Virus record (IMG/VR): IMGVR_UViG_3300011934_000017
Location: 124,001-188,000 of that record
Strand: one strand, 5' to 3'
DNA: 64,000 nucleotides
The position numbers and the translations under genes were made by a program. Positions within the stretch are counted from its first letter, which is position 1; each line of letters starts with the position of its first letter. The notes under the pieces were generated by a model, which was not told the origin of the DNA, did not search any database, and saw nothing but the letters and a program-made list of their open reading frames with translations. This document shows positions 2,375-30,784 of the stretch, piece by piece.

Positions 2375-2467
2375 GAACGTTAACAAGCGCCGTAACCAAA
2401 TTAACAAGCGCTCTAAGCTCTTGACTAGACGCACTTTCATTATATCATACTCATATATAGAAAGCAA
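2375..2467 (-). promoter_or_regulatory. sigma70-type promoter (TTGCTT-17-TATAAT, extended -10 TG) plus 28-bp downstream element, copy 1
   Basis: -35 at 2467-2462, -10 at 2444-2439, element AATTTGGTTACGGCGCTTGTTAACGTTC at 2402-2375. Confidence 0.85.
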
Positions 2468-2474
2468 ACAAAGC

Positions 2475-2495
2475 AAAAAGGCCCCGTAGGGCCTT
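2475..2495 (-). terminator. intrinsic terminator after recA
   Basis: AAGGCCC-TACG-GGGCCTT followed by T tract on the minus strand. Confidence 0.8.
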
Positions 2496-2499
2496 AGTT

Positions 2500-3990
2500 T
2501 TATTCGTCGTCGTCTTCATCCGATACTGCCGCAGATTTTTTGTTGGTATTGGAAGCACGTTTGAAGTCTACCAAATACTCATAGCCCTTTCCAGTTGCTA
2601 CCTGTTTTCGTAGAAAGTTTCGGAACAACACAGGCTTTTTCATATTCAGTGCATCGCACAGTGTACGAATGTCGGAGCGATCACCTTCAATCATGGTTTT
2701 GAACTGCGTCCATGTCAGTGTGACACCGTCTAAAGGACTCTTGAAGTCTATGTGGTAAGTCTTTTCTTTGCCTGTAGACTTATCACGTTTCGTAACATCA
2801 AAACCACTCAGGAATTTGATCTTCTTACGGGTGCCTCCAACTTGACCTGTCATCTTCAGATATTGATACGCATCCCATGTCGCACAAAAGCCAGTAGCAT
2901 CACCTTCAGCATTCTCAACAACAAGGCGCATCGTGATGGTCTGGTTAGGAACACCCCCAAGCTTGTTCTTGTGGCTGCGAATCTTGATATAGCGGTACGT
3001 ATCATTACCGTCTGCAATAACAGACTCTTCTTCTTCCAACATACCTTTACCGTGCGGAATGCTGACAGAAGACATACGTAGGCGAACGTCTGAGTAAAAC
3101 TTCAGTGCGTCACCGCAAGGCTCAGTCTCGGAAGGACCATACATTGCCATAGGTACTTTACGAAGCTGATTAACGCCGAGTACCACGATACGCTTGGAGC
3201 GCATCATGCCTTTCACACGCTTTAGGCCGTCGGAGAACATACGTGCTTGAAGCGCCAGCGACTTATCGCCTTCTTCTTTCTCGTCTGCAATACCAGGAAG
3301 CATGGCAGGATAAGAGTCAGTAAGAACGATAGCCTGAATACCTCCATCTTCAGCAGGAACACGAAAGCGATTGGTCTTGGTGAAGTATTTCTTGTCGTAT
3401 AAACCTTTAAGCGCTTTCTGATTCTCTTTGGTGTTATCGTAAATGAAATACCATTTGCCGTTCATTCGCACTTTGTCAGGCAAGACTTTACCCATCTTAG
3501 ACAGGTAGTTAAAGAATTTCTCGCCTGTGTCAGGAGCGTAGTAACGAACACGTGGTGCTACTACCCATTCTCCTGTCACGTCATCACGAACACCGAAAAC
3601 TTTCTCTACATCGCCGCTAACACCCATAGAGTGCATGATGTTTTCAATGTAGTCAGCTTGCGAACTACCTTCATAGTCAAAGTAGCTTGCAAAGCCTTTG
3701 AAAGCTTTCTGACCCATGATAGACGCAAGAATGGTCATGGCTGTTGTAGACTTACAGGACTGCTCGCCGCCGAAGCATGTATACCAACCACCACCTAACA
3801 TGCCTCCAGCTAACGCAACATCTAGCGATAGCAGGCCGGTACTGAATCGAGGTTCGTCTTTATCAATAGCCATAGAAGAGAGTCGAAACTTCTTTTCCAT
3901 GCTATCAATTTCAGCATCAATATGGGAGTAGGGATTAAACGCAGGAACCTCAGCTTCTTCAACACTTGTGCTTTTCTTACGCTTTGCCAT
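2500..3990 (-). CDS. recA: RecA/UvsX-like recombinase
   Basis: STG..SLDVAL.GG, Walker A GGEQSCKST, LTDS, ALQARMFS, GVNQLR, GDALKFYSDVRLR. Confidence 0.93.
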   Translation of the reverse strand: MAKRKKSTSVEEAEVPAFNPYSHIDAEIDSMEKKFRLSSMAIDKDEPRFSTGLLSLDVALAGGMLGGGWYTCFGGEQSCKSTTAMTILASIMGQKAFKGFASYFDYEGSSQADYIENIMHSMGVSGDVEKVFGVRDDVTGEWVVAPRVRYYAPDTGEKFFNYLSKMGKVLPDKVRMNGKWYFIYDNTKENQKALKGLYDKKYFTKTNRFRVPAEDGGIQAIVLTDSYPAMLPGIADEKEEGDKSLALQARMFSDGLKRVKGMMRSKRIVVLGVNQLRKVPMAMYGPSETEPCGDALKFYSDVRLRMSSVSIPHGKGMLEEEESVIADGNDTYRYIKIRSHKNKLGGVPNQTITMRLVVENAEGDATGFCATWDAYQYLKMTGQVGGTRKKIKFLSGFDVTKRDKSTGKEKTYHIDFKSPLDGVTLTWTQFKTMIEGDRSDIRTLCDALNMKKPVLFRNFLRKQVATGKGYEYLVDFKRASNTNKKSAAVSDEDDDE

Positions 3991-4003
3991 TCTATAACCT
4001 CAC

Positions 4004-4025
4004 AAAAACTGGCCGAAAGGGCCTT
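4004..4025 (-). terminator. GGCC hairpin plus T tract just upstream of the recA RBS
   Basis: GGCC-CTTTC-GGCC-AGTTTTT on minus strand; short stem. Confidence 0.5.
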
Positions 4026-4032
4026 ACGAAAA

Positions 4033-4100
4033 AGGATACATATCTAATAGTATCGTCTTTTAGATATGTATCCTACTCGCCGAAACTGAACGAGTAGGAT
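4033..4100. repeat. two overlapping perfect inverted repeats (15 bp and 10 bp)
   Basis: AGGATACATATCTAA 4033-4047 / TTAGATATGTATCCT 4060-4074; ATCCTACTCG 4070-4079 / CGAGTAGGAT 4091-4100. Confidence 0.9.
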
Positions 4101-4194
4101 ATTCGTGCCATCTCTATATGTCATCTATACGTTCGGTATTTCTGTCATTGCGCCCGTCTGCAAACTGTTACCACAAAAACAGCGGTTGCGGCGC

Positions 4195-4344
4195 TCACAT
4201 ACTGCCTACTTCTCGGGGCGGCATCAACCTTGAGCAATCTTGATCGTGTTTATAAACGACCTCAGCTACACTACACAGGTTCACGATAATCGGCAGTTGT
4301 GGTACTGCCACCCAAAGCAGTAGGAGAAACAATATGTATAGCAT
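4195..4344 (-). CDS. 49-aa small protein with hydrophobic N-terminus (below ORF-track cut-off)
   Basis: Strong SD TAGGAGA 5 nt before ATG; MLYILFLLLLWVAVPQLPIIVNLC... Confidence 0.5.
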   Translation of the reverse strand: MLYILFLLLLWVAVPQLPIIVNLCSVAEVVYKHDQDCSRLMPPREVGSM

Positions 4345-5534: not shown

Positions 5535-6551
5535 TTAAGAAATGCCTTCTTCTCGCATCTGGTTTTGCATCAAGGCCAATTCGTCGGCGGTAAAATATTC
5601 ACCTATGTCAAGGTAAAGCCTAGCACACCCAGAAATATCAGCATGTTTAGCTAAGTACATAACGATAGAGTCCGTTTCACCTCGTTCAAAATCGTGGTGT
5701 ATATCTTGGCCGTCACCTAAGACATTGTGCAAGCTTTTGGAGTCGTCTTCACCTGCAAGTTCATCTAGGCTGACGCTGTGATTCATAAAGCCGGTGTTTT
5801 TCTCTGCAATCTTTTTACGGTGGGATTGAGGAACGACATAGGCAATACCGTATTCGTGCTCTACCGTATTGCAGGTCTGAGCATTGAGAATCCACCAATT
5901 TAGATAGGAAGTCAAGGCACCCTTGTTACTATCATACTTATCAATCGCCAGCAAAATGCTTTTAAGAATAGACTGCCGAACATCATGAAAATCAAAATTA
6001 CTTCCGTTTGCATCTATGTGGATTTTGGCTTGCTTGGAAGAAAGCTTTAGATAGTGGTCTAACACTTTGGATCGACATTCATAAAATTTGGCTAAATAGG
6101 AAGCACTGATAGACATAATGCGATAAAAGCCTTGTCTGTCTGTGCGAAGCTGTGAAGCCTGTTTGTCCAATCTTTGCTTTAACTGGAGCCTGTGATTTCT
6201 ATCTGTCGTCATCATAGTGCTGTAGTCAGACAGGTAGTTAGGAAACATACGAAGAACTCTGCCTACGAAAACGTGCAGGAAGGAGCGTTCAAGCCTAGCT
6301 TCTCGTAGGAGTTCGAATTTCTCTGAACGATCCTCAGATACAAGAAACCTACATAGAATTTCTACAGTACGCTCTCTAGGCAAAGAACTGGGTTTTCTTT
6401 TCCTGTTAGCAGACACCAGCACTAAAATATAGGAGACCTGTTCATCAAAAACATCAGAGTTTAATATTATGGGCTCTAAAGCTTTATACAAGAACAGGTC
6501 CATCACTTGCTGGATCTGCTCACCTGTCAAATTTTTAGCAAGCAGAGTCAT
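5535..6551 (-). CDS. phage-encoded sigma70-family RNA polymerase sigma factor
   Basis: Region-2-like DVRQ...LLAIDKYDSNKGALTSYLNWWI; region-3-like SVSLDE. Confidence 0.78.
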   Translation of the reverse strand: MTLLAKNLTGEQIQQVMDLFLYKALEPIILNSDVFDEQVSYILVLVSANRKRKPSSLPRERTVEILCRFLVSEDRSEKFELLREARLERSFLHVFVGRVLRMFPNYLSDYSTMMTTDRNHRLQLKQRLDKQASQLRTDRQGFYRIMSISASYLAKFYECRSKVLDHYLKLSSKQAKIHIDANGSNFDFHDVRQSILKSILLAIDKYDSNKGALTSYLNWWILNAQTCNTVEHEYGIAYVVPQSHRKKIAEKNTGFMNHSVSLDELAGEDDSKSLHNVLGDGQDIHHDFERGETDSIVMYLAKHADISGCARLYLDIGEYFTADELALMQNQMREEGIS

Positions 6552-8005: not shown

Positions 8006-8668
8006 CTATTTGGTTTCAGATTCTTTTTCCACCAAACTGAGAAATTGTAGAATAGAGTCTCTGGACCAGTTGTCAAATGTTTTTCCTACGACCGTTCCAT
8101 CGTACTTGGTTTTTGGATCTAACTTGAACCAGAGAACTTCAATAAGCTCGTCCGTTTCTAAAAGGTCTTCATCTTCTCCTAGAAATTTCGAAGAAGGTCT
8201 TGTGTCTGATCTAACAGTTTCTTCGTGGAAGAGATTGCGCCAGCTTTTAGGTTCTGACTCTTCGAACACCATTTGCTGGCCGGTGTGTTCTACAAGCTTA
8301 GCTTTCGGTCCAATGATGTTACTCATATTTTCCATGATACGGGAAAACACCAGTAAATCCATAGAACTGAAATCATCATCTTTGATGCTGAGTGTGAAAG
8401 TTGCTAGCTTTGCAGTTTCCATCTTGCTCTCCTTAGAATATGGGGATTCTGGTTCAGGAATAGGAGTCTCAACAACATCGAGAATTTTAGACATAAAAAG
8501 CTCGTCCTGTTCACCGTGCAACCAAAGGTGAGAGTCTTCCTCTAGTTCCTCATGAAACGGCTCATAGAACCACTCTAATAAAACCCACTTCTTGAAAGGC
8601 TTTCTATGATTCATAGAGGTCAGTACCCAGTACCAACCTGGCTTTCTATTTTTGTCGTTTGTGTTCAT
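8006..8668 (-). CDS. hypothetical protein (possible internal start at 8422)
   Basis: 220-aa ORF; in-frame ATG at 8422 has SD AAGGAG. Confidence 0.65.
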   Translation of the reverse strand: MNTNDKNRKPGWYWVLTSMNHRKPFKKWVLLEWFYEPFHEELEEDSHLWLHGEQDELFMSKILDVVETPIPEPESPYSKESKMETAKLATFTLSIKDDDFSSMDLLVFSRIMENMSNIIGPKAKLVEHTGQQMVFEESEPKSWRNLFHEETVRSDTRPSSKFLGEDEDLLETDELIEVLWFKLDPKTKYDGTVVGKTFDNWSRDSILQFLSLVEKESETK

Positions 8669-9137
8669 TGATAACCTCGAAGGAGCGCTTAGTTATTTCT
8701 TGATGATGTTCCATCAACTCTTTTCGAACTTCTGTCAAAATGCGACCAAGATGATTTTGACCAGTGCCTTCTACTTTACCCCAGAATCTATCGCCATGAT
8801 TGTTTCCTTCTTCTAACACAGCAGGGTACGTACCGATCAGTGAAATAGATAGATCAGGATTCTGTTTAAATTTCATGCGTACAATATTTTTCATCACGCG
8901 AAGCTTAACGTCTTCCCAGTCTTCACGCATAACAACCTTGTATCCAAAATGCTTTGCTTGCTTGGGCGAAGTAGCTTCAGCGATCTTTCGTTTCATCTGC
9001 CTATCACCAGTCTTGGCTGCCTGATAGGCGTGTTCAGAAGTCGGATAAGTAATGCCCCTACGTTCAATAGGGGCTGCATAGAAGTTGCTGAGGAAAAAAT
9101 ACTTTCCTCGAAAGCGATCAATTAGAGTGACGGTCAT
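8646..9137 (-). CDS. NADAR (YbiA-like) family protein
   Basis: FLSNFY, SEHAYQAAK, W...K..VM....KF.QN, E....DRFWG, G.N.LG..L..VR. Confidence 0.93.
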   Translation of the reverse strand: MTVTLIDRFRGKYFFLSNFYAAPIERRGITYPTSEHAYQAAKTGDRQMKRKIAEATSPKQAKHFGYKVVMREDWEDVKLRVMKNIVRMKFKQNPDLSISLIGTYPAVLEEGNNHGDRFWGKVEGTGQNHLGRILTEVRKELMEHHQEITKRSFEVINEHKRQK

Positions 9138-19617: not shown

Positions 19618-19709
19618 GAACGTTAACTAGCACCGTAACCAAATTTCTATCTGCTCGTTTTGGCTCGCTGCTACATCTTCATTATATCACATCTACAACC
19701 GCTCTGCAA
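19618..19709 (-). promoter_or_regulatory. sigma70-type promoter plus 28-bp element, copy 2
   Basis: TTGCAG-17-TATAAT (19686-19681); element 19645-19618. Confidence 0.85.
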
Positions 19710-20200: not shown

Positions 20201-20292
20201 GAACGTTAACAAGCGCCGTAACCAAATTGCGCTGCTCTCGTTTTTGCTTGGTCTTACATCTTCATTATATCACATCTGAGACCACACCACAA
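20201..20292 (-). promoter_or_regulatory. sigma70-type promoter plus 28-bp element, copy 3
   Basis: TTGTGG-17-TATAAT (20269-20264); element 20228-20201. Confidence 0.85.
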
Positions 20293-20319
20293 CGACTTTC
20301 TGCTGTGGTGTGGTGCGTA

Positions 20320-20694: not shown

Positions 20695-20701
20695 GTTGTC
20701 A

Positions 20702-20798
20702 CCTCTACAAACTTTACAAGGCAGCGAACATCAACAAACGCCGTAACCAAGTTCTGCTGTGCTCGCTGAGGGGTTGGTACTACATCTTCATTATATCA
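20702..20798. repeat. 97-bp perfect direct repeat, copy 1 (RBS, 28-bp element and extended -10 promoter; promoter copy 4)
   Basis: Identical to 23922-24018; element 20753-20726, -10 at 20795-20790. Confidence 0.95.
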
Positions 20799-20825
20799 CG
20801 TCAGGAGTCAAAAGAACAGCATTTT

Positions 20826-21155: not shown

Positions 21156-21165
21156 AATGGTTCTC

Positions 21166-21489: not shown

Positions 21490-21499
21490 CTTTACATCC

Positions 21500-22255
21500 T
21501 CAGTTTTTATGTATCATGTAGTCGGCAACGATCTTGGCAGCGTCACGTCCTACAGAGTCATCATTAGCCAGATGTATATTCAGGCGTAGCATATCTTCAT
21601 GCTGTCCAAAATGTCCCCACATGTTTTCATACTCGTCTTTGGTAGGTGCACCTCGATCCAAAAAGCTTGATTGACCTCCGCTTTTCGTCAACTGACACCA
21701 GCGACCGAAAACACCTGTCTGTGACTCCAGAATAATCTCAAAGACGATCAGGCTAACGCGAATATAACGCATAGCAGGATCATTATGAAACATGACAGGT
21801 ATATCCACGTACATTCTTGAAGTGGGATGATCTTGACCTAACAGGTAAGAGTTTAGTCGCAGAGGCAGCTTCGTTCCTGGGCGCAGCGGGTGGTCAAACC
21901 AGCGTAGTGAGTGTGCGAAGTATTTATCCAGGTGTGTCTTATCGATCAGTGGGTAGAAAGGGGCACCAACTGCTTTTACAGGACGGGGCCATTCGCGGTT
22001 CTCCAAAGAGAACATCGAAGGTGCGCAAATAACATCAGGTGAATCCAGTGAGGCGACGGAATACCCGTGTGTAGAAAAGGCAGGCTTCAACCGAAGCTCG
22101 TTATACATGAAATCCAAGATCAACTTTCCACCTTCTTCGATAGTCTCACCTGCGTCTTCGAACACATACTCCATGTAGAAATAAGGAATCGAATGGCCTT
22201 CTTTACTGAGTGAGGCACCTTGAATCAAATTTTCTAAATACAAGCGGTCGTTCAT
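21500..22255 (-). CDS. hypothetical protein
   Basis: 251-aa ORF with SD GAGG. Confidence 0.7.
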   Translation of the reverse strand: MNDRLYLENLIQGASLSKEGHSIPYFYMEYVFEDAGETIEEGGKLILDFMYNELRLKPAFSTHGYSVASLDSPDVICAPSMFSLENREWPRPVKAVGAPFYPLIDKTHLDKYFAHSLRWFDHPLRPGTKLPLRLNSYLLGQDHPTSRMYVDIPVMFHNDPAMRYIRVSLIVFEIILESQTGVFGRWCQLTKSGGQSSFLDRGAPTKDEYENMWGHFGQHEDMLRLNIHLANDDSVGRDAAKIVADYMIHKN

Positions 22256-22265
22256 AATTAGTACC

Positions 22266-22532
22266 TCATTTACGGTTAGTTCTTAGGTGAACGCTGCGAT
22301 CTGGAAACGGCGGTGAAACACGTCCCAGAATCTTCACAACATAGGACATTCGTATGTTGAAAGTTCTTGACGACATAGGACACCAAACAGTAAGCTCGGC
22401 CATTCCAGAACGTGCTCCGTTTAGATTTAACATGCCAGGCGAAAGCAACAACACAGTATAATCGGGATCACCGTTGTTCCCAAGAATCTGTAGCCACGTA
22501 CCGCTCATTAAATTGTCAGTGCCTAGTTTCAT
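22266..22532 (-). CDS. hypothetical protein (start trimmed; ATGA-coupled to upstream gene)
   Basis: ATG 22532-22530 overlaps TGA 22531-22529 and has SD GGAG. Confidence 0.65.
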   Translation of the reverse strand: MKLGTDNLMSGTWLQILGNNGDPDYTVLLLSPGMLNLNGARSGMAELTVWCPMSSRTFNIRMSYVVKILGRVSPPFPDRSVHLRTNRK

Positions 22533-23080
22533 TTCTTTGCTCCAAGTTGTTTTTCCAACGACCGATAAAGCTCTTCTTTTCGCTGCTGTATTGTCAGTTC
22601 CATCTGGCAAAGTTCGTGATACTCCATAAGCGCTACAGCCTTTTCACCTATATTCAACGCGGTAGGTGACTCTCTCTCTTCGACGCGAGGTTGAGAAGCA
22701 ATCTCTTTGTGCTCGGCCAGGTGTTCTGGATTAATCACTCTACGTCCGTGTGCCAAACCGATACGATAACCATACGACGCTCTGCCGTGCATGTACTTTG
22801 GTTGAATACGACGATTGGTGCGATATACATCGGAAAGTCCTTTTCTATGTGCTTGACTCAATACCGAAGAAATGGCAGAAATAAAAGAACGTACATCGTG
22901 GCTTTCTAGGCTTTCAATCTTTATGCATTGCCGATCGAGAATGCAGAAAGCAATGTCAACCGAGGTGTAGAAAACGGACGAGTCAACATTTACCATAGCA
23001 CCGAGAGTGCCAATCACACGGGTTCTAAAACCGTAATCAAGGATATTTGAGACGCGCTTATCTGAGAATGTTTGAAACAT
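22529..23080 (-). CDS. hypothetical protein
   Basis: 183-aa ORF with SD GGAG. Confidence 0.7.
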   Translation of the reverse strand: MFQTFSDKRVSNILDYGFRTRVIGTLGAMVNVDSSVFYTSVDIAFCILDRQCIKIESLESHDVRSFISAISSVLSQAHRKGLSDVYRTNRRIQPKYMHGRASYGYRIGLAHGRRVINPEHLAEHKEIASQPRVEERESPTALNIGEKAVALMEYHELCQMELTIQQRKEELYRSLEKQLGAKK

Positions 23081-23130
23081 GATACAACTCCAAGAATAAA
23101 AGAAGTGAGGGACATCGCGCCCCTCTAGGT

Positions 23131-23421
23131 TTAACCGTACGTGAAAAGAAACGACTCGCCGTCTTTCTTGAGACGAATGGCTCGAATCAGTGGACCGAAC
23201 GAATCGCTTTCAAGATCATACCACTTACCTGCGGCAAACCCTTTGGCCTTAAAAAGATTTGTCGCTGTCTCCTCTCACGACTCAAAACTTTTTGCTATAC
23301 AAGGTAAACCATGTTCCACTCTGTGCTTGTTAGCGTGGCGGATAACGTCATGCGTCATACAGAAGCCTGACTCGTCGGACGTATCAAGCTCCGGGAAATC
23401 ATCAATCGTTAAATGAGGCAT
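23131..23421 (-). pseudogene. 96-codon frame split by one in-frame TGA (23277-23275)
   Basis: SD GGAG + ATG at 23421; MPHLTIDDFPEL...KSFES*EETATNLF...LFTYG-TAA stays in one frame. Confidence 0.55.
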
Positions 23422-23434
23422 AGTCTTTCTCCAG

Positions 23435-23455
23435 AAAAGCGGGGCCTAGCCCCGC
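23435..23455 (-). terminator. intrinsic terminator
   Basis: GCGGGGC-TAG-GCCCCGC-TTTT on the minus strand. Confidence 0.75.
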
Positions 23456-23464
23456 GAGTAGAAG

Positions 23465-23914
23465 TTAGAAACAGTTCTTGATTGCGCCCATCACTTCAGG
23501 CAAGCGACCAGTAACAAGCGAACTTTCGTACATGAATTTCGGCTGAGCACCGTTGAACACATCGTGCTCGGTGTTTTCATCTTCAATGAAGGCTAGGTAC
23601 ATATCGCTGTTGACAGAACTCTGGCCAACAGGCAAGCGACCGTGCTTGATGTTGAAGGTACCAGGCTCAACTTCTGCACCGAGCATGACAACGACTCGGC
23701 GACGATCAATAAGACCAATACTGAATCCTTCTGCAAACTCTGTATCGTGTAGTTTCACCGAAGCCACGTCCTGTTCAGACACACCAGAAAGGTCATGTGC
23801 AAACTTCGCAAGCTCGCGGCAGGCAGAAATCGAACCGGCTTTCATATCTTCACCGAGGCGTGAAATAACAGACCAGATAATACCGAGACCAGAAATTTTA
23901 TCGTATGCGTACAT
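23465..23914 (-). CDS. hypothetical early protein
   Basis: Directly behind repeat copy 2 (RBS GAGG). Confidence 0.75.
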   Translation of the reverse strand: MYAYDKISGLGIIWSVISRLGEDMKAGSISACRELAKFAHDLSGVSEQDVASVKLHDTEFAEGFSIGLIDRRRVVVMLGAEVEPGTFNIKHGRLPVGQSSVNSDMYLAFIEDENTEHDVFNGAQPKFMYESSLVTGRLPEVMGAIKNCF

Positions 23915-23921
23915 GATATAT

Positions 23922-24018
23922 CCTCTACAAACTTTACAAGGCAGCGAACATCAACAAACGCCGTAACCAAGTTCTGCTGTGCTCGCTGAGGGGTTGGTAC
24001 TACATCTTCATTATATCA
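23922..24018. repeat. 97-bp perfect direct repeat, copy 2 (promoter copy 5; -35 TTGTAT at 24038-24033)
   Basis: Identical to 20702-20798. Confidence 0.95.
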
Positions 24019-24038
24019 TACCCAGCACCTGAATACAA

Positions 24039-24314
24039 CTACTGAAGCAGGAGCTCAAGATCAGCTAGGCTGGTACCTAGAATAGCATCCTCAGAGAAAG
24101 TTGAAATAAGCCGTGCGTTATACCAATGAGCGCTGGGATGCTCGTTAGGTATCTTACGACACATCTGCGCCATTACGTACATGGCAAAGTGCGGGTATTC
24201 GTATGCTGAATAGCTTTCAGGATTATCCGGCATCTTCATACCCGAGTTGGAAGCTGCTTGAGCCAGACTGCGAATATCCATGAGGGCGTTGAAGTCTTCG
24301 GTACGCTTATTCAT
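24039..24314 (-). CDS. hypothetical protein
   Basis: ATG at 24314 with SD GGAG. Confidence 0.7.
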   Translation of the reverse strand: MNKRTEDFNALMDIRSLAQAASNSGMKMPDNPESYSAYEYPHFAMYVMAQMCRKIPNEHPSAHWYNARLISTFSEDAILGTSLADLELLLQ

Positions 24315-24582
24315 CTTCTTCTCCAATTAGTTCTTCACGTTTAGCAACACGAATGGCTTTCTTGACGGCAGCCAGCAGATCGTACAGGTCTTCGACAGGT
24401 ACTGACAAGCCTTTCGAGGTAGGTGCAAACTTTTCCATCTTCTCCGTCTTGTAGTAGCGACGAAGATCAACCATAGACTTCTCTTCAAACTCGTTTATGA
24501 CCATTCGCACCTCTGAACCTTTAGCGCTGTTCAGGCGAGCGATACGATGAACGGAGTTAGGCTTAACGTAGTTCTTAGGCAT
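24307..24582 (-). CDS. PC4/p15 (transcriptional coactivator-like) ssDNA-binding protein
   Basis: EVRMVINEFE...VDLRRYY......PTSKGLSV. Confidence 0.85.
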   Translation of the reverse strand: MPKNYVKPNSVHRIARLNSAKGSEVRMVINEFEEKSMVDLRRYYKTEKMEKFAPTSKGLSVPVEDLYDLLAAVKKAIRVAKREELIGEEDE

Positions 24583-24631
24583 GATAAAAATCCTTTGCAG
24601 AATAGCCCCGGACTGTCCGGAGCATGAGAGT

Positions 24632-24967
24632 TTATACGGAAAAGATTACGTCGTACTTGGAGAGGAGAACAGGTCCCAATTCCCAGACGTAAGCATCATA
24701 CAGGAAGTCATTGTCTTCCTGCTTGCTCCAAGTTTCTTGCTTCTCGATCCAGTCGATCATCTGATCCACAGTATCAAAGAAGGCAGCGTGAATATTCCCC
24801 CAGCCACAAGGCCACGCTTTCTTGCGATACACGCAGGCATACACAGCGGTGTCTGGCCAGATATGCCCATGAAGATCGTGGTCTTCAATGTGCGACTGAA
24901 GGGCCGATACAAACTTTTCAGGTGCAGTTGAAAATACGGTACCGGGCTGCTGAATGATGTAGGGCAT
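24632..24967 (-). CDS. hypothetical early protein
   Basis: SD GGAG; first gene behind promoter copy 6. Confidence 0.7.
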   Translation of the reverse strand: MPYIIQQPGTVFSTAPEKFVSALQSHIEDHDLHGHIWPDTAVYACVYRKKAWPCGWGNIHAAFFDTVDQMIDWIEKQETWSKQEDNDFLYDAYVWELGPVLLSKYDVIFSV

Positions 24968-24988
24968 GATGTTTCTCCAAGATACAAG

Positions 24989-25080
24989 GAACGTTAACTA
25001 ACGCCGTAACCAAATTGCGTTACGCTCGTTAGGGGCAGGTGCTACATCTTCATTATATCACAATTTAAGCTGTCCTACAA
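24989..25080 (-). promoter_or_regulatory. sigma70-type promoter plus 28-bp element, copy 6
   Basis: TTGTAG-17-TATAAT (25057-25052); element 25016-24989. Confidence 0.85.
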
Positions 25081-25106
25081 GGACTCTAATTGCTGAGGAG
25101 AATACT

Positions 25107-25583
25107 ATGCATTTCTACGATGAAATTCAAAAGAACAAACCACGCAAGGTCGAGGTAGAAAAAGCACCGACCGACGTTTTGATTCTGAAGCGGGAGTACA
25201 TGCGCGAAGGCACACACGGTACGTTTATCTTTCCCGACGGCAGCAAGCTAGACACTCTGGAGCTTCCGTGGAACGATAACAAGCAACGGGTGTCCTGCAT
25301 TCCCGAAGGAAAGTATAAGCTGAGAAAGCGTTACTCTCCTGTCGTGAAGCGATCTTCTGGAAATGAGTTCGCTAACGGGTGGGAAGTAACAAACGTAGAG
25401 AACAGGACCTACATCATGATTCACCCTGGAAACTACGTGCGCAACTTCTTAGGTTGTATTGGTGTTGGGTTGAGTAAAGGTTTCCAAGGCAACTCACCTG
25501 TCATCTGGAACAGCCGTGCAGCTTTTCGCAAGTTCATGGCTAAGATGAAAGTTCACGAAGAGTGGACGCTTATCGTAGAGTAA
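25107..25583 (+). CDS. DUF5675 family protein (putative L,D-transpeptidase-fold cell-wall enzyme)
   Basis: R......T.G......TLELPW.DN....SCIPEG.Y...R.YI.IHPGN......GCI.VG. Confidence 0.85.
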   Translation: MHFYDEIQKNKPRKVEVEKAPTDVLILKREYMREGTHGTFIFPDGSKLDTLELPWNDNKQRVSCIPEGKYKLRKRYSPVVKRSSGNEFANGWEVTNVENRTYIMIHPGNYVRNFLGCIGVGLSKGFQGNSPVIWNSRAAFRKFMAKMKVHEEWTLIVE

Positions 25584-25584
25584 C

Positions 25585-25624
25585 AAAAAGCCCCGCTATC
25601 CTTAATTGGACGCGGGGCTTTTTT
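25585..25624. terminator. bidirectional terminator between convergent genes
   Basis: AAAAAGCCCCGC...GCGGGGCTTTTTT. Confidence 0.85.
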
Positions 25625-26155: not shown

Positions 26156-27715
26156 CTACAATGTAAGACCCGACTTCACTTTGTCCGGATTCTTCAGATA
26201 AGCCGCAACACGCTTCTGTGTGTCTTTAGCTGCGCGAGCACCAGGGTCTTTCAAGTCTTTAGTCAGACCTTCAATTTCTTTTCGTAAGGCTGCAATCTTT
26301 GTTTTCAGATCGGCTGCTTCCAACTTAGCCAGCTTACGCACCTGACGATTCAGAATGATAGTGGCGTCTGCTTCGGGCATCTTCATTGCCTTGGCCAGTG
26401 TCGCGTCAGGATTATCTGCTACCAGCACTTTAGGCAGCACCTTCAACAACTTCTCCATATTCTCAACAGCGAACAGGTAGACCTCTTGTAAGTGAAGCTC
26501 TTTCTTGGCTTTCTCAAGCAGGTTCTCAACCAACCGTAGCTCCAGAGCAATGCGATACTTGATCCAAGCACTAAAGAACTTGTCGTATCCAAGATAGTGG
26601 AAAGCATTGCGGTCATCTTCTTTTCGAACCGTGATACCAAGACGATAGCTTACTTTACTGGTAGTCTGCTTTTCTACCTTCTCTACAATATCGTAGAAGT
26701 CTTCAGTGCCGAGACCTTTCTGGCACTCAATGATAAACAAGGCGCCGTACGGGCCACTGCCTTTAGACTTCTTGCCTTGCTTGCTGTAACACTTGCGAAC
26801 ACCGTCAATGTTGCTAATCTTTTCCAGTGTCTTATCAATCTGGACAGTAGATGACAAACCAGAAGGAACGAAAGAACGGATGTATAGGGTCTTCTTATCG
26901 TAGTCCTCTTCAAACAGCGGAGCATACGTAACACTGCCTTTGCCTGTCTTTACCATTTCCTCCATGTCGGCTCTTTCAATAGACGCATCGCATCCCCAAG
27001 CGTGTTGCACCTCTAGCATAGATGCTAACTTCTTGGAGCTAATCGTCTTGCCTTTGAGCAGTGCAATAACTACCTTGGCTACGCTGCGAAACGAGAAGCT
27101 TGGGTTACCTGCGCGAACGCCGTATGCTGGCGCTGGTATGTTACCATTAAACAATGCATACGGTAGTAGTGATGGAAGAAACAGGGGAATCGTATCGTCA
27201 CCACTGAAGTTGGGAACCTTCGGCACAACCTCTAAGTAGTCACGGTCTAGCATGAAGCTATTCGTAAACTTACTCATACGTGCTTCAGTGTAACGCTGAG
27301 CAGCAGGAGGATTGATCGGTGTACCCCAGTTACCTTGACCGTCTACCGCAGGTGGCATTGTGTTTGCAATCGTAACCATCGCACCGTAAGCAGCGCTATC
27401 ACCATGCGGGTGATATTTACCGATGGTGTCACCAACAGTACGTGCAGACTTTTTATACGAGCTGGACGGACGCAAGTTAAGACCAGCTAATGACCAAAGT
27501 AATGCGCGGTGCACAGGCTTCAGACCGTCACGATAATCGGGTACCGCACGATCTTCTACAACGTAGGCACCGTAGATGCTAAGTGCTTCGGCTGTGAACT
27601 TGTCTAAGCCTTGGTCCCGTAATGTGGTGTCAGTGATACCAGGCATCGGGAAAATAGACAGGTCATCAGTCTTTGCAACTTGAGTGGTCTTTGCTTTGCG
27701 TGTTTGCTTTACCAT
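26156..27715 (-). CDS. gyrA: type IIA topoisomerase subunit A (GyrA/ParC-like), no C-terminal pinwheel
   Basis: DGLKPVHR, KKSARTVGDTIGKYHPHGD, GQGNWG, AAQRYTEARMS (catalytic Tyr). Confidence 0.95.
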   Translation of the reverse strand: MVKQTRKAKTTQVAKTDDLSIFPMPGITDTTLRDQGLDKFTAEALSIYGAYVVEDRAVPDYRDGLKPVHRALLWSLAGLNLRPSSSYKKSARTVGDTIGKYHPHGDSAAYGAMVTIANTMPPAVDGQGNWGTPINPPAAQRYTEARMSKFTNSFMLDRDYLEVVPKVPNFSGDDTIPLFLPSLLPYALFNGNIPAPAYGVRAGNPSFSFRSVAKVVIALLKGKTISSKKLASMLEVQHAWGCDASIERADMEEMVKTGKGSVTYAPLFEEDYDKKTLYIRSFVPSGLSSTVQIDKTLEKISNIDGVRKCYSKQGKKSKGSGPYGALFIIECQKGLGTEDFYDIVEKVEKQTTSKVSYRLGITVRKEDDRNAFHYLGYDKFFSAWIKYRIALELRLVENLLEKAKKELHLQEVYLFAVENMEKLLKVLPKVLVADNPDATLAKAMKMPEADATIILNRQVRKLAKLEAADLKTKIAALRKEIEGLTKDLKDPGARAAKDTQKRVAAYLKNPDKVKSGLTL

Positions 27716-27726
27716 AACAACCCCTT

Positions 27727-29772
27727 TTAATCTTTAAGACCGAGTAAGCGACGACGATAAACAGCATCTTCAGCCACAACACCGCGGAAGAAACGCTCCT
27801 GCTCTTTGTCAGCAAACGGATTGATTCGAATCATCTTACGTGTACCAGGATTGAATGCGATCGGTTCAAGGTATGTTTCATCAACTTCACCCCAACCTTT
27901 GATACGTACAATATCTTTATCTTTCACTGAGGCTGGCGCTTGTGCTCGTGCTTCTGCAAACGTCATACCGCCGTAAAGTTTGTTATTCTTTACAACTGCG
28001 TAAAGCGGAGCTTCGATACACCACACGCGGCCTTCTTTGAACATATCTGGCAACAGGCGATAGATAGCAGCTAGATACAGGACAGCAATGTGACCACCAT
28101 CTGGATCAGGGTCAACCAAAAGAATGACGTTCGCTGTGCGCAACTTTGCCGTGGACAGCGTTGGGTTCTCTGCTTTAGGGTCAAGTGTCTTTACATCAGC
28201 ACCAAGGGCCGTAAGCATCTGCTGAATTTCAGAGTGTGCCAGCACTTTAGACAACGGTGCTTTGAGAGCATTCAGCGGCTTACCACCAGCGGGAAGCACC
28301 TCTTGGTAGTCAGAGTTGCGAGCATCAATCGCGGTTCCAGCCGCGCTGTCACCCTCCACAATATAGAGTTCACGTTCACTGGGCTTGGCACGATCAGCGA
28401 CAGCAAGACCTGCAGGAAGCGCAGAGCCTTTAGTCTTCTTTTTCACATCAGCCATAGAACGCACAACAGCCGCAAGATCGGTACGACCTTTACCCATAGC
28501 CTGTGCGCGTTTAACGATGGCTTTAGCGGTCTTCTTATTTTTATCAAAATACTCTTCAATCGCAGGAAGCAAAGCATCGTAAACTTCACGGTCTACTTTC
28601 GACGCCAGCTTATCTTTTACCTGAGACGTATACTGTGCCCCATGCATTCGAAAGTCAAACAGACCTGTAAGGCCAATCAGCAGGTCAGAGCCTTTGAAGC
28701 CGAGCGCACGACCTTTACCTTTGGTAGTAGGTGTGAAGGGCTTGATTGCTTGTACGACAGCATCCGTAAAGCCTTTAACGTGCCAACCACCGTCGGCCGT
28801 GGGACTTGTATTGACAAAGCTCAAAAAGTTGTCGATATCAGGATGATCTGCCCATGTCACTGCGCAGCTAATGTAGTCGGACTTGAATGTGAATGGTTTG
28901 CCAAGCGGCGTAAGCTCTCGGCTATCACACATGGTCTTGGGAATCCATGAAAGGTCTTTCTTATTCTGAAAGACAGCACTCTTAACTTTTTCTTTGCGCA
29001 CGACTGTAAGGCGAATGACCAGACCTGGATTAAGATTAGCCATGTACTTCAACCAATCAGCAACTTTCTTTGCGTCAGGTTCTGCCTTAACAAAATTCTT
29101 GGGCAGCTTCTTTCCACGTCGTGCGGATTCTGACACTACATCTTGGTCAAGGCGACACGCGATAATAGTGCCGTACTTCTGGACTTTCTTGTCTTTCAAA
29201 AGCGCCATAACATCAGCGTCAACTTTCTTTACTTTGACAGGATGATCGCCTTTGGTGGTAATCTCACCTTGCTCGAAGCTTTGATAGACCAGATTGCCGT
29301 TGTAAGTAGACCATGCGCGTAGACTTGAACTGATAGCATTCACGGCAGCTACACCTATACCGTGTGTGCCCGCACTGGTCTTGTAGGCTTTGTCGTTGAA
29401 CTTACCGCCTGCGTGTGTGCGTGTCAGTGCAGCGGTCATGATTGTAATCTTTTCACCGCTTTTCAATTTCTTAAAGTCGGTTGGAATACCACCTGCACCA
29501 TCGGCAACAACTAACAGGTCATTATCATAGTCGATGACCACTTCGATCAGATTGTTACGACCGCTGATATGTTCGTCGTAGGAGTTGTCAACTTTTTCTT
29601 TCAGAGCACGGCGAGCCATTTCTTCACCAAGCTCACCTAGGTACATGGTAGGGTTGGCGCGGATACCTGAAAGTCCCTCCATTATTTCGAAGCCTTCTTG
29701 TGAAGCTGACTTCTTTTTAGTTTTCGAAGAGCCTGTCACGTCTACCTCTTGAACACCTTTCTTTCTGGCCAT
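27727..29772 (-). CDS. gyrB: type IIA topoisomerase subunit B (GyrB/ParE-like)
   Basis: EKVDNSYDE, DGAGGIP, HAGGKF, GTHGIGV (GHKL ATPase); EGDSAAG, DPDPDGGHI (TOPRIM); KGWGE. Confidence 0.95.
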   Translation of the reverse strand: MARKKGVQEVDVTGSSKTKKKSASQEGFEIMEGLSGIRANPTMYLGELGEEMARRALKEKVDNSYDEHISGRNNLIEVVIDYDNDLLVVADGAGGIPTDFKKLKSGEKITIMTAALTRTHAGGKFNDKAYKTSAGTHGIGVAAVNAISSSLRAWSTYNGNLVYQSFEQGEITTKGDHPVKVKKVDADVMALLKDKKVQKYGTIIACRLDQDVVSESARRGKKLPKNFVKAEPDAKKVADWLKYMANLNPGLVIRLTVVRKEKVKSAVFQNKKDLSWIPKTMCDSRELTPLGKPFTFKSDYISCAVTWADHPDIDNFLSFVNTSPTADGGWHVKGFTDAVVQAIKPFTPTTKGKGRALGFKGSDLLIGLTGLFDFRMHGAQYTSQVKDKLASKVDREVYDALLPAIEEYFDKNKKTAKAIVKRAQAMGKGRTDLAAVVRSMADVKKKTKGSALPAGLAVADRAKPSERELYIVEGDSAAGTAIDARNSDYQEVLPAGGKPLNALKAPLSKVLAHSEIQQMLTALGADVKTLDPKAENPTLSTAKLRTANVILLVDPDPDGGHIAVLYLAAIYRLLPDMFKEGRVWCIEAPLYAVVKNNKLYGGMTFAEARAQAPASVKDKDIVRIKGWGEVDETYLEPIAFNPGTRKMIRINPFADKEQERFFRGVVAEDAVYRRRLLGLKD

Positions 29773-29802
29773 AATACAATTCCTGATATCGATTGTCTTC
29801 TA

Positions 29803-29810
29803 TATTTACA
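29803..29810 (-). promoter_or_regulatory. TGTAAATA motif
   Basis: Between terminator and gyrB start. Confidence 0.6.
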
Positions 29811-29824
29811 CTAATCTCAGAAAC

Positions 29825-29855
29825 AAAAAGACCTCACAATTAAGGAGGTCTTTTT
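29825..29855. terminator. intrinsic terminator
   Basis: AAAAAGACCTC-ACAATTAAG-GAGGTCTTTTT. Confidence 0.85.
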
Positions 29856-29875
29856 GATATTGCTTTAGCGATTGA

Positions 29876-30244
29876 TCACGGTGCATAGTCCATCAGCATT
29901 TCTGCTAATGTTTCACAGTTTCGGCGAGTAAACTTCATACGCGCTTTTTTCATGTAATCCGCACAAAGATCAATAATCTCGCCTTCATCTTCTACATCTT
30001 CCATGTCTGGAAGTTCTTCACCAGTGGTCGTCTGAATACGATCCCGAACGTAGTCGTCAAGAAAGTTTGCAAACTTTTGGCGCTTACTCATTCCCATCAT
30101 CCGAGAAGAACCATAGTCTGTCTGGTTGCTGATTTCCAAAATCATTGCATCTTGTTTCTTCACGTCTCTAGGAACATTACCATCAATAGCGTTTTTGATA
30201 CATTCAGGAATATCGGAAGCGGCGGTGCTGATATAAACTTTCAT
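29876..30244 (-). CDS. hypothetical protein
   Basis: 122-aa ORF, SD GAGG; starts MKVYISTA. Confidence 0.7.
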   Translation of the reverse strand: MKVYISTAASDIPECIKNAIDGNVPRDVKKQDAMILEISNQTDYGSSRMMGMSKRQKFANFLDDYVRDRIQTTTGEELPDMEDVEDEGEIIDLCADYMKKARMKFTRRNCETLAEMLMDYAP

Positions 30245-30260
30245 AGTATAAACCTCTGAG

Positions 30261-30695
30261 TTAAGACTTTATTGAGCTAAGTAACGAAAACACATCAAGA
30301 CCGCGAAACAGATAATCAACAGGTGCTTCCCACAATATGACTCTATTGCCTCGCGTATCAATGCGCACCACGTTGAAATAAATTATGTTGTTTTCCGCAC
30401 TTAACACGATGTTGGCTATGGCGGACAACGGCCCTACAATGTCCAACTGAAGTTCAGCACCGTCTCGAAAAGAAAATCGAATACGGTATTGAGGAAACAC
30501 TGTGCGAAGATAGTCTATAAGATCAGAAGCATTTTTCTGAAACATAGGATCAACAAGAGGATTGTATTGTACGTCCGCACGATTGCGAAAGTCTTCCCGT
30601 GCGGACATATTTAAAAGAACGAGCTTATGGACGATAAACGCGCCATCTACAATGACGTTCCGCGTGTCTGGAGCTAAGCTATAAGCGCTGGTCAT
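30261..30695 (-). CDS. hypothetical protein
   Basis: SD GAGGTG; behind promoter copy 7. Confidence 0.7.
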   Translation of the reverse strand: MTSAYSLAPDTRNVIVDGAFIVHKLVLLNMSAREDFRNRADVQYNPLVDPMFQKNASDLIDYLRTVFPQYRIRFSFRDGAELQLDIVGPLSAIANIVLSAENNIIYFNVVRIDTRGNRVILWEAPVDYLFRGLDVFSLLSSIKS

Positions 30696-30710
30696 AATTC
30701 ACCTCAATCT

Positions 30711-30784
30711 AAACGTTAACTAAGTCCGTAACCAAGTTTAAAAGTTCTCTATAATGGAGCTGTCTTGCTTTTACAGTATATCAC
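30711..30784 (-). promoter_or_regulatory. extended -10 promoter (GTGATATACT) plus 28-bp element, copy 7
   Basis: -10 at 30780-30775; element 30738-30711; -35 not evident. Confidence 0.75.

What the first reader, a model, noticed from the sequence alone, without database searches (positions are those of the whole stretch)
2375..30784. 28-bp element with an invariant TTGGTTACGG core, fixed 35-36 nt downstream of the -10 box in seven promoters
Seen: copies at 2375-2402, 19618-19645, 20201-20228, 20726-20753, 23946-23973, 24989-25016 and 30711-30738. The sense consensus is AAYTTGGTTACGGNNYTWGTTRAYGTT, and the 10-nt core is identical in all seven. Each lies 35-36 nt downstream of a TG-n-TATAAT (once TATACT) -10 box, while its distance to the start codon varies from 15 to 35 nt. 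The sequence between the -10 region and the element varies. So the element is tied to RNA polymerase geometry, not to the ribosome. The RNA can form a small GUUAC/GU(U)AAC hairpin, and the DNA holds partial palindromes (GTTAAC, AACGTT). Inference: it may be a nut/put-like antitermination or pause signal in the nascent RNA at about +29 to +56, or an operator that lets one phage protein switch off all early promoters together. Possible trans factors are the PC4-like protein (24307-24582), the HeH-repeat protein (18005-19582) and the sigma factor.
Basis: partly seen in the sequence, partly recalled or inferred. Interest (0 to 1): 0.85.

Follow-up and report, generated by a model that had tools for sequence, protein, structure and literature searches.

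The report
Conserved site just downstream of phage promoters
Seven strong promoters of an uncultured jumbo phage related to Pseudomonas phage PaBG each carry the same unstructured sequence about 30 bases into the transcript; it is conserved across the whole clade, most likely as the docking site of a still unknown regulator that controls this promoter class together.

Summary
Seven exact TTGGTTACGG cores lie on the minus strand, none expected by chance. Each sits 38-39 nt after a TGnTATAAT (once TATACT) extended -10 box. These are the only copies in the 220-kb source contig.

The phage is a PaBG-like jumbo phage. The element is conserved in relatives whose neighbouring proteins are no longer alignable. 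It has three blocks in fixed register: CGAGC, about 10 nt, TGGTTAYG, N4, TWG-n-T-n-A-S-G-T-T.

The nut/put reading is therefore not supported.

The -10-to-core gap is constant within a genome but differs between lineages (29-40 nt). In PaBG and its close relatives most promoters carry a second, inverted copy on the other strand with no consistent ORF behind it. That copy lies at the same distance from an overlapping antisense -10.

This points to a transcription-level, probably DNA-level, site rather than a translational signal. My best reading (0.4) is a promoter-proximal operator for a clade-specific regulator. A single-stranded RNA motif (0.25) remains open.

The PC4-like and HeH proteins have no PaBG homologue, so they are poor candidates. 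The element is undescribed and of moderate interest.

The parts
2376..2467 (-). Promoter-leader cassette 1. -35 TTGCTT 2462-2467; -10 TATAAT 2439-2444 with TG; GAG block 2411-2413; core 2390-2399; block 3 TTGTTAACGTT 2376-2386. It is preceded by an intrinsic-terminator-like hairpin after the RecA/UvsX-like gene and drives ORF 1832-2347.
   Evidence: the model R1 match was listed (E = 5.8e-08, a sequence the model was built from)
19619..19709 (-). Cassette 2. -35 TTGCAG 19704-19709; -10 19681-19686; core 19633-19642; block 3 19619-19629. It drives 18005-19582 (525 aa), 17672-18001 and probably the HU-like gene 17269-17640.
20202..20292 (-). Cassette 3. -35 TTGTGG; -10 20264-20269; core 20216-20225; block 3 20202-20212. 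It drives ORFan 19798-20169.
20727..20818 (-). Cassette 4. -10 20790-20795; core 20741-20750; block 3 variant TTGTTGATGTT 20727-20737. It drives ORFan 20320-20694, a paralogue of 19798-20169. Positions 20702-20798 are identical to 23922-24018.
23947..24038 (-). Cassette 5. -35 TTGTAT; -10 24010-24015; core 23961-23970; block 3 23947-23957. It drives ORFan 23465-23914, which ends at a terminator-like hairpin at 23455-23439.
24990..25080 (-). Cassette 6. -35 TTGTAG; -10 25052-25057; core 25004-25013; block 3 24990-25000. It drives 24632-24967, then the PC4-like gene 24307-24582 and 24039-24326.
30712..30803 (-). Cassette 7. -10 TATACT 30775-30780; core 30726-30735; block 3 30712-30722. It drives 30261-30695, 29876-30244 and the topoisomerase II operon 26156-29772. 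It occupies the same position ahead of the topoisomerase operon as the PaBG cassette at 108.8 kb.

Best explanation
The element is the downstream half of a roughly 90-bp promoter module that defines one class of host-RNA-polymerase promoters in PaBG-like jumbo phages. The module runs: extended -10, about 25-30 transcribed bases, then the blocks CGAGC, about 10 nt, TGGTTAYG, N4, TWG-n-T-n-A-S-G-T-T.

I read the conserved blocks as a sequence-specific, unstructured binding site (an operator) for one clade-specific factor, probably phage-encoded. The site starts at about +17 and ends at about +55, just beyond the downstream edge of promoter-bound polymerase.

When occupied, it would hold or block polymerase leaving the promoter. 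That would switch all 7-8 promoters of the class together, most likely off after the early or delayed-early phase. In the PaBG subclade the promoters are of the symmetric, bidirectional type, and the same site is placed at the same distance on both sides, so both exits are controlled.

Shown: the conservation, the register, the promoter coupling, the lack of RNA structure, and the inverted copies with no consistent ORF behind them. Inferred: that recognition is on DNA, the sign of regulation, and the identity of the factor.
For: 1. Selection on sequence, not structure. Positions T14, G16, T18, A20, G22-T24 and G-11/C-10, none of which was used to select the copies, are 78-100% conserved in 32 non-redundant copies from at least 8 genomes. 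RNAalifold finds 0 pairs and no column pair covaries.
2. Strict promoter coupling. All 7 window copies, all 13 PaBG sites (0.35 expected) and all copies in relatives lie at a set distance from a -10 box. None is isolated and none lies in the late-gene arm of PaBG.
3. The gap to the -10 is held to within 1 nt inside the window (38-39) and to 31-34 nt across about 25 PaBG-like promoters, although the intervening sequence is unrelated. The distance to the start codon runs from about 5 to more than 50 nt.
4. The two short-gap variants differ from their genome's norm by 9-10 nt, about one helical turn: L129 30 against 40, L170 29 against 38.
5. In PaBG, 6 of 7 sense sites have an inverted copy on the other strand, usually 72-74 nt away. 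These copies keep GGTTAYG-N4-TWG-N3-A-S-G. They lie after the stop codon or terminator of the upstream co-directional gene, with no consistent ORF behind them. This excludes a purely translational role.
6. The element is absent from more distant relatives that keep the same topoisomerase operon (AD1, L134, L137, L174, L176). The partner is therefore probably clade-specific rather than a universal host machine.
Against: - No cognate DNA-binding protein was identified. The only recognisable DNA binders in the window (HU-like 17269-17640, PC4-like 24307-24582) have no PaBG homologue.
- The site has neither dyad nor clear direct-repeat symmetry.
- It always lies inside the transcript and in the sense orientation of its own -10, so an RNA or non-template-strand reading fits the same facts. 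The inverted copies also lie at the right distance from an antisense -10 and could simply be leaders of antisense RNAs.
- The gaps of 29-30, 31-34 and 38-40 nt do not share one helical phase across lineages.
- In roughly a third of the PaBG-like copies the AGG of block 3 sits 5-11 nt before the ATG and probably serves as the Shine-Dalgarno. Part of the conservation there is therefore RNA-level.
- No transcription start sites are mapped.
Confidence: 0.4

Rival explanations
1. Single-stranded RNA motif in the 5' leader. A phage or host RNA-binding protein, or a trans RNA, would recognise UGGUUAYG-N4-UAG in the unstructured leader and set translation or stability of all messages of the class. T4 RegA does this on many early mRNAs.
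For: - The motif is always transcribed and always in the sense orientation.
- The window leaders are unusually unstructured, with z-scores at or above 0 in five of six.
- The motif is unstructured, like RegA operators.
- Block 3 doubles as the Shine-Dalgarno, 5-11 nt before the ATG, in roughly a third of PaBG-like copies.
- The core resembles the RegA SELEX consensus around UUGUUAUG. This comes from my memory and was not tested.
Against: - Inverted copies with no gene behind them are conserved.
- The distance to the start codon is 40-60 nt in the window, outside a ribosome footprint.
- The distance to the 5' end, not to the ATG, is what is held constant.
- No RegA-like family (nor any other RNA-binding family) appeared among the ~50 window ORFs scanned.
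- No complementary anti-core sequence exists in the window.
Confidence: 0.25
2. Cis-acting elongation signal read by the polymerase that transcribes it. This could be a pause, antitermination or factor-loading site, acting either as nascent RNA (nut/put-like) or as the non-template DNA strand in the bubble (ops/RfaH-like).
For: - The position is fixed relative to the start of transcription in both directions of the bidirectional promoters.
- Copies without a downstream gene fit a signal that acts on polymerase rather than on a gene product.
- Operons with internal or terminal terminator-like hairpins follow some cassettes.
Against: - No conserved hairpin exists, so boxB and put structures are absent.
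- boxA and ops consensus sequences do not match the cassettes.
- The consensus-pause and -10-like readings fail at their key positions: position 19, the A-11 equivalent, is A in only 16 of 32 copies, and there is no G at -10 relative to the conserved YG.
- No NusG/KOW family hit was found in the ORFs scanned.
- Several cassettes drive a single short gene.
Confidence: 0.12
3. Second, tandem promoter. The core would be an activator box or an alternative-sigma element (like the T4 MotA box at -30), with block 3 as a weak -10, so that the genes are also transcribed later from inside the leader.
For: - The core (WWnTGGTTAYG) loosely resembles the T4 MotA box (tttTGCTTtA); this is from memory.
- T18-n-A20-S-G-T23 can be read as TAnnnT in half of the copies.
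- The phage encodes its own sigma-70-family factor at 5535-6551.
Against: - The A-11 equivalent is not conserved (16 of 32).
- The spacing from box to hexamer is 8-10 nt, not 11-13.
- In many relatives the ATG follows block 3 by 5-9 nt, so such a transcript would lack the Shine-Dalgarno.
- The element is absent from the late-gene arms.
Confidence: 0.08
4. Relic of cassette spread. The promoter cassettes would be mobile or recombining modules (like T4 PeSL cassettes or MITE-like inverted-repeat elements), and the core would be conserved only by recent copying.
For: - There is a 97-nt identical pair within the window.
- The cassettes cluster in a hyperplastic ORFan region, 16.9-25.6 kb, that has no PaBG homologues.
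- Paralogous ORFans follow cassettes 3 and 4.
- Inverted-repeat architecture occurs in PaBG-like genomes.
Against: - The core and block 3 are kept across genomes in which the spacer and flanks are saturated with changes.
- Cassettes in the same positions (after the RecA/UvsX-like gene and ahead of the topoisomerase operon) keep the core between the window and PaBG.
- Sense and inverted copies form two distinct conserved subtypes rather than copies of each other.
Confidence: 0.05

Closest known systems
Multi-copy asymmetric phage operators: mycobacteriophage L5 gp71 'stoperators' and P1 C1 operators (from my knowledge of the literature)
   Same: A short asymmetric conserved sequence is present in many copies. 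It lies in short intergenic regions inside transcription units, in one orientation relative to transcription, and lets one protein control many units.
   Different: - Those belong to temperate phages and have known repressors; stoperators need no fixed distance to a promoter.
- Here there are only 7-8 copies, each at a fixed distance from a -10 box, in a lytic-type jumbo phage.
- No repressor has been identified.
GalR OE/OI-type operators that bracket a promoter (from my knowledge)
   Same: In PaBG-like relatives two copies of the site flank the promoter on either side, just outside the polymerase footprint.
   Different: - The gal operators are dyad-symmetric sites 113 bp apart that loop with HU.
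- Here the sites are asymmetric, inverted, about 72 nt apart and centred on overlapping -10 boxes.
- The window lineage has only the downstream copy.
T4-type PeSL cassettes (promoter-early stem-loop; Arbiol et al. 2010, from memory)
   Same: Repeated regulatory cassettes with an early sigma-70 promoter flank small ORFan genes in a hyperplastic region. Near-identical copies suggest recombination between them.
   Different: - PeSLs are defined by a stem-loop followed by a promoter and have no conserved element downstream of the start site.
- Here only cassette 1 (and PaBG 20.6 kb) has the upstream terminator hairpin, and the conserved part is downstream.
Lambda nut / HK022 put / RfaH ops
   Same: A conserved signal sits in the leader of several operons, co-oriented with transcription.
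   Different: There is no boxB or put-type structure, no boxA or ops sequence match, and no N, NusG or RfaH-like protein found.
T4 RegA translational operators
   Same: An unstructured U/G/A-rich RNA motif is shared by many early messages.
   Different: - RegA sites overlap the start codon.
- Here the motif is 27-60 nt upstream of the ATG and also occurs with no consistent ORF behind it.
- No RegA family protein was seen.
Symmetric bidirectional bacterial promoters (Warman et al. 2021, from memory)
   Same: In PaBG-like relatives the -10 hexamers of the two strands overlap by 5 bp with an offset of 1 (for example CATTAT over TATAAT at PaBG 98.44 kb).
   Different: That work describes the promoter symmetry only. 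The conserved element at equal distance on both sides is additional.

Membership tests
Sigma-70 extended -10 promoter | TGn immediately upstream of a TATAAT-like hexamer | tested here: met
   TGaTATAAT in six copies and TGaTATACT in one
Sigma-70 extended -10 promoter | -35-like TTGnnn at 16-18 nt | tested here: met
   TTGCTT, TTGCAG, TTGTGG, TTGTAT and TTGTAG at 17 nt in 5 of 7 copies. This feature is not needed for extended -10 promoters.
Sigma-70 extended -10 promoter | Transcription actually starts about 7 nt downstream | not testable with these tools
   No transcriptome or TSS data are available.
Lambda nut site | boxB stem-loop | tested here: not met
   RNAalifold finds 0 pairs on 31 copies. 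The proposed 4-bp hairpin shows no covariation, and its outer pair is broken in 21 of 31.
Lambda nut site | boxA consensus (CGCUCUUA / UGCUCUUUAACAA) | tested here: not met
   No sense-strand match within 3 mismatches falls in any cassette.
Lambda nut site | N-type arginine-rich antiterminator protein | not tested
   Small ORFans were not examined for arginine-rich motifs.
HK022 put RNA | Conserved two-stem-loop RNA of about 65-70 nt | tested here: not met
   There is no consensus structure. Window leaders fold no better than shuffles. No Rfam family matches.
RfaH ops element | GGCGGTAGnnTG on the non-template strand | tested here: not met
   No match within 2 mismatches falls in any cassette.
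RfaH ops element | A NusG paralogue encoded with it | tested here: inconclusive
   No NGN/KOW Pfam hit appeared among the ~50 window ORFs scanned. Only 64 of 220 kb was seen.
Multi-copy asymmetric operator (stoperator / P1 C1 type) | Conserved asymmetric site, many copies, one orientation relative to transcription | tested here: met
   Seven copies in the window and 7-8 sense copies in PaBG, all co-oriented with their -10 box.
Multi-copy asymmetric operator (stoperator / P1 C1 type) | A cognate sequence-specific repressor | tested here: inconclusive
   None was identified. The HU-like and PC4-like proteins are not conserved in PaBG. PaBG annotates Arc-like and other regulators outside the region compared.
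T4 PeSL cassette | Stem-loop (terminator) directly followed by an early promoter, repeated around ORFans | tested here: inconclusive
   An upstream hairpin is seen only at cassette 1 and at PaBG 20.7 kb. Repetition around ORFans is met.
T4 RegA operator | Site overlaps the translation start | tested here: not met
   The core lies 40-60 nt before the ATG in the window. Inverted copies have no consistent ORF behind them.
T4 MotA-dependent middle promoter | Box at -30 plus TAnnnT 11-13 bp downstream | tested here: not met
   The A-11 equivalent is A in only 16 of 32 copies, and the spacing is 8-10 nt.
Any Rfam family | Covariance-model match | tested here: not met
   No gathering-score hit in the window. 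Only chance-level hits at E above 1 in 19.5-25.2 kb.

The most novel reading that the evidence does not exclude
The element is not an operator but a new kind of promoter-proximal signal read by the elongating host polymerase itself or by a phage factor riding on it. It would act as unstructured nascent RNA or as the non-template strand, and would convert polymerase leaving these promoters, in either direction, into a modified state (paused, terminator-resistant or terminated). It would be an ops/put-like system without hairpins in jumbo phages that encode no RNA polymerase of their own.
Probability: 0.12. Interest if true: 0.85.

Novelty: new variant of a known kind. Interest (0 to 1): 0.55.

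Why it matters
PaBG-like jumbo phages encode no recognisable RNA polymerase of their own, only a sigma factor (PMC7412058). How they time gene expression is unknown, and no promoter or regulatory motif has been described for them.

This element defines a whole promoter class. That class drives the fast-evolving ORFan region and also conserved replication and recombination operons. It is as strongly conserved as the -10 box itself, so it marks a central control point.

It gives a concrete handle. A 25-40 nt bait could be used to fish out the regulator in the cultured member PaBG on P. aeruginosa PAO1. It is also a simple sequence tag for recognising this promoter class in metagenomic jumbo-phage contigs. 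If the factor acts on polymerase rather than on DNA, it would be a new elongation-control mechanism.

Tried and rejected
Rejected.
- **A 5' terminal hairpin between the start site and the core.** It is significant in about half of the relatives (z at or below -2 in 13 of 32) but absent from the window copies. It is therefore not part of the core function.
- **Rfam.** Nothing found.
- **Leader peptide or stop-codon reading of the conserved TAG/TRA.** The frames are inconsistent across copies (by eye on the, 30 sequences). Short ORFs from the core ATG occur in only 3 of 6 PaBG inverted copies.
- **Pairing of the core with the 16S rRNA 3' region.** I recalled only 6-8 bp, in regions that are base-paired in the ribosome, and the T/A variation at core position 6 would break it. 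This was not pursued or tested.
- **CsrA/RsmA GGA sites.** The GG at positions 9-10 is not conserved.
- **IHF, DnaA, sigma-dependent pause and consensus pause.** Key positions are not met.
- **Phage HU-like protein (17269-17640) as a TF1-like binder.** It is an attractive idea, because the gene probably lies in a cassette-driven operon. However, it has no homologue in cultured phages or in PaBG.
- **BLAST of cassettes against cultured phages.** Only PaBG itself is found.
- **Literature.** The core string appears only in unrelated papers, none about phage regulation. The PaBG paper describes no promoters.
- **Metagenome scan.** It found no relative closer than 78% in topoisomerase, so no short-range substitution analysis was possible.


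Full report
**1. The observation**

The 24-nt degenerate consensus matches the same seven places, with 0.00 expected from shuffles. A looser version of the pattern finds only these seven in the whole 220,237-nt source contig, IMGVR_UViG_3300011934_000017.

Each core lies 38-39 nt after the last base of a TGaTATAAT box (TGaTATACT at 30726). Five of the seven also have TTGnnn exactly 17 nt upstream of the -10, so these look like strong sigma-70-type promoters. The distance from the end of the element to the ATG is 16-36 nt.

Two qualifications apply:
- Copies 20741 and 23961 lie in a 97-nt identical duplication, so there are six independent copies.
- The spacer is not free. GAAGATGTAG follows the -10 in five copies, and a (C/A)GAG block sits at a fixed distance before the core in all seven.

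All strong extended -10 boxes between genes on this strand carry the element.

**2. The genome**

The window encodes the following:

| Coordinates | Protein |
|---|---|
| 26156-29772 | T4-type topoisomerase II, two subunits |
| 2500-3990 | RecA/UvsX-like protein |
| 5535-6551 | Sigma-70-family factor |
| 33129-34166 | PD-(D/E)XK nuclease superfamily (PDDEXK_1); its PaBG counterpart gp152 is annotated 'CRISPR/Cas system associated' |
| 24307-24582 | PC4-like protein |
| 17269-17640 | HU-family protein |

The window has no near-identical cultured relative. It is syntenic with Pseudomonas phage PaBG at 81-147 kb. PaBG-group phages have no recognised RNA polymerase, only a sigma factor (PMC7412058).

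Window 16.9-25.6 kb holds five cassettes and has no PaBG homologues. It is a hyperplastic ORFan region bounded by conserved genes. The other two cassettes sit after the RecA/UvsX-like gene and ahead of the topoisomerase operon. PaBG has cassettes at both of those positions.

**3. The element in relatives**

I fetched loci around the topoisomerase gene from viral and metagenomic contigs and ran pattern scans. The element appears in every member of one subclade: L129/L169, L170/L178, L130, L131, L132 with its 277-kb contig, L136/L172/L001, L147, L158, L171 and PaBG itself.

Thirty-two non-redundant copies, aligned without gaps, show three blocks in fixed register:
- CGAGC at -14 to -10 relative to the core start (G-11 in 27 of 32).
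- W-W-n-TGGTTAYG, the core.
- After four free positions, T14 (31 of 32), W15, G16 (30 of 32), T18 (32 of 32), A20 (32 of 32), S21, G22, T23 and T24 (29-30 of 32).

Only the core positions were used to select the copies.

The neighbouring small proteins of these genomes are mostly no longer alignable. The element is therefore under purifying selection about as strong as that on the -10 box.

More distant relatives that keep the topoisomerase operon lack the element (AD1, L134, L137, L174, L176, L177). AD1 promoters have a 5' hairpin but no core.

**4. RNA structure**

- The seven window leaders fold no better than shuffled sequence, and each folds differently.
- On 31 aligned copies RNAalifold predicts no base pair.
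- A scan of all column pairs found no helix, only one lineage-linked pair.
It does not exceed the shuffle control, and its outer pair is broken in 21 of 31 sequences.
- About half of the relatives have a significant small hairpin between the predicted start site and the core. Its sequence and position vary, and the window copies lack it.
- Rfam has nothing.
- boxA and ops consensus sequences do not match the cassettes.

Structured-RNA readings (nut boxB, put) are therefore not supported. What is conserved is primary sequence.

**5. Geometry**

| Lineage | Gap from -10 to core (nt) |
|---|---|
| Window | 38-39 |
| L129 | 40 in four copies, 30 in one |
| L170 | 38 in three copies, 29 in one |
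| PaBG-like (about 25 promoters) | 31-34 |

In the PaBG-like group the intervening sequence is unrelated between promoters.

The gap is thus tightly held within a genome but is not universal. The two short variants differ by 9-10 nt, about one helical turn. By contrast, the distance from the element to the start codon runs from about 5 to more than 50 nt. In roughly a third of the PaBG-like copies the AGG of block 3 sits 5-11 nt before the ATG and probably acts as the Shine-Dalgarno. In the window, L129 and L170, block 3 reads TAACGTT and a separate Shine-Dalgarno lies further downstream.

**6. Inverted copies**

In the complete PaBG genome a relaxed block 2-3 pattern finds 13 sites against 0.35 expected. 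Seven are sense copies on the minus strand. The model adds a degenerate eighth, after the UvsX-like gene. Six are inverted copies on the plus strand, five of them 72-74 nt from their partner.

- The two -10 hexamers overlap by 5 bp on opposite strands. Each direction therefore has the element at the same gap.
- The inverted copies lie just after the stop codon or terminator of the upstream co-directional gene. They have no annotated or consistent ORF behind them.
- They keep GGTTAYG-N4-TWG-N3-A-S-G but form their own subtype, so they are not mere copies of their partners.
- The same architecture is seen in L130, L131, L132, L136 and L172. It is absent from the long-gap lineage (window, L129, L170).
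- No site is isolated from a promoter. None lies in the late-gene arm or in the 235-258 kb block of PaBG.

**7. Interpretation**

A conserved, unstructured, asymmetric sequence is tied to the promoter rather than to the gene, and it is kept even where no gene follows. That rules out a purely translational element and argues for action at the level of transcription.

The simplest reading is an operator. One clade-specific regulator would bind just beyond the downstream edge of promoter-bound polymerase, and in PaBG-like genomes on both sides of a bidirectional promoter. It would control the whole class of 7-8 promoters together. I give this 0.4.

It is not proven that recognition is on DNA. The sites are always transcribed and always co-oriented with a -10 box. 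A single-stranded RNA motif (0.25) or a signal read by the elongating polymerase (0.12) fits much of the same evidence. A tandem second promoter (0.08) and a pure duplication relic (0.05) are unlikely, for the reasons given under the rivals.

**8. Trans factors**

The HU-family protein that I noticed in the cassette-2 operon has none either. The sigma factor is conserved (E = 1e-104), but according to the PaBG paper it is also shared with relatives outside the clade that carries the element. PaBG annotates Arc-like and other small regulators in its 235-258 kb block. I could not test whether they co-occur with the element.

**9. Comparison and novelty**

In function the element most resembles multi-copy asymmetric phage operators (L5 stoperators, P1 C1 operators). 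In genomic setting it resembles T4 PeSL cassettes. In the PaBG subclade it resembles operators that bracket a promoter. It fails the defining tests for nut, put, ops, RegA operators and MotA-type promoters (see the membership table).

I found no description of it. The core string occurs only in unrelated papers, none about phage regulation. The PaBG genome paper reports no promoters.

I rate it a new variant of a known kind, a phage promoter-linked control site, and of moderate interest. It is a clean, testable handle on gene regulation in a poorly understood jumbo-phage group, and PaBG on PAO1 is available as an experimental system.

Noticed in passing
L130 17302, L136 13788, L151, L158, L159, L170 (3 copies), PaBG 20.55, 81.24, 108.78 and 117.58 kb; window 12 copies, e.g. 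17963 (+), 23805 (-): The motif (GAAA)AGTTTGCA(CA), sometimes AGTTAGCA, recurs 5-25 nt downstream of block 3 in many relatives' leaders. As an 8-mer it is about six-fold over-represented in the window (12 copies against about 2 expected). Some copies are intergenic, next to terminator hairpins or upstream of late genes; others lie in-frame as K-F-A codons. It may be a separate phage promoter or regulatory motif.
   Followed up: partly
PaBG whole genome (L180, L179, L138, L181-L183); also L132, L136, L164, L171: CGAACATG is a recurrent start-codon context in PaBG. About 45 copies are spread over the genome, and many coincide with annotated gene starts, including topoisomerase, the major head protein and gp160. 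This looks like a clade-specific conserved spacer between the Shine-Dalgarno and the ATG. It is nearly absent from the window (2 copies).
   Followed up: partly
window 17269-17640 (-): A phage-encoded HU-family DNA-binding protein (Pfam Bac_DNA_binding, E = 6.8e-16). Its best solved relatives are HU, the ASFV histone-like protein pA104R and SPO1 TF1. The gene probably lies in the operon driven by cassette 2. It is conserved in L129 but has no homologue in cultured phages, PaBG included.
   Followed up: partly
window 16900-25600: A hyperplastic region of ORFans without PaBG homologues, bounded by conserved genes. It contains the tandem paralogues 19798-20169 and 20320-20694, each with its own cassette, and the 97-nt identical cassette pair 20702-20798 / 23922-24018. 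This suggests recombination between cassettes.
   Followed up: partly
L147, L149, L151, L153, L158, L161, L163, L167, L001; PaBG 4.4 and 20.6 kb: Promoters of the PaBG-like subclade share a conserved upstream motif, AC(K)ACTGAT(Y)GCAG-N3-TGnTATAAT, in place of a TTGACA-like -35. This may be contact with a phage factor or with the phage sigma.
   Followed up: no
L168 (Dickeya phage AD1) 11807 and 15634: AD1 has its own repeated promoter cassette, GAATAGTCTTAT-n-TGATATAAT followed by a 5' hairpin, ahead of and after the topoisomerase operon. It has no TGGTTAYG element.
   Followed up: no
window 634-1305 (-), 8646-9137 (-), 31626-32201 (-): Accessory genes: an MgtC-family membrane protein (E = 3e-33), a NADAR-domain protein (E = 3e-27) and a staphylococcal-nuclease-like protein.
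   Followed up: no
L130 7361-7456 (+): At the topoisomerase-operon promoter of L130 the inverted and sense copies share a perfect 15-nt stretch, TGGTTACGGCCATAG, including the otherwise free N4 positions. In a read-through transcript the two arms could form a long-range duplex. PaBG shows a 20-of-25 match at the promoter in the same position.
   Followed up: no
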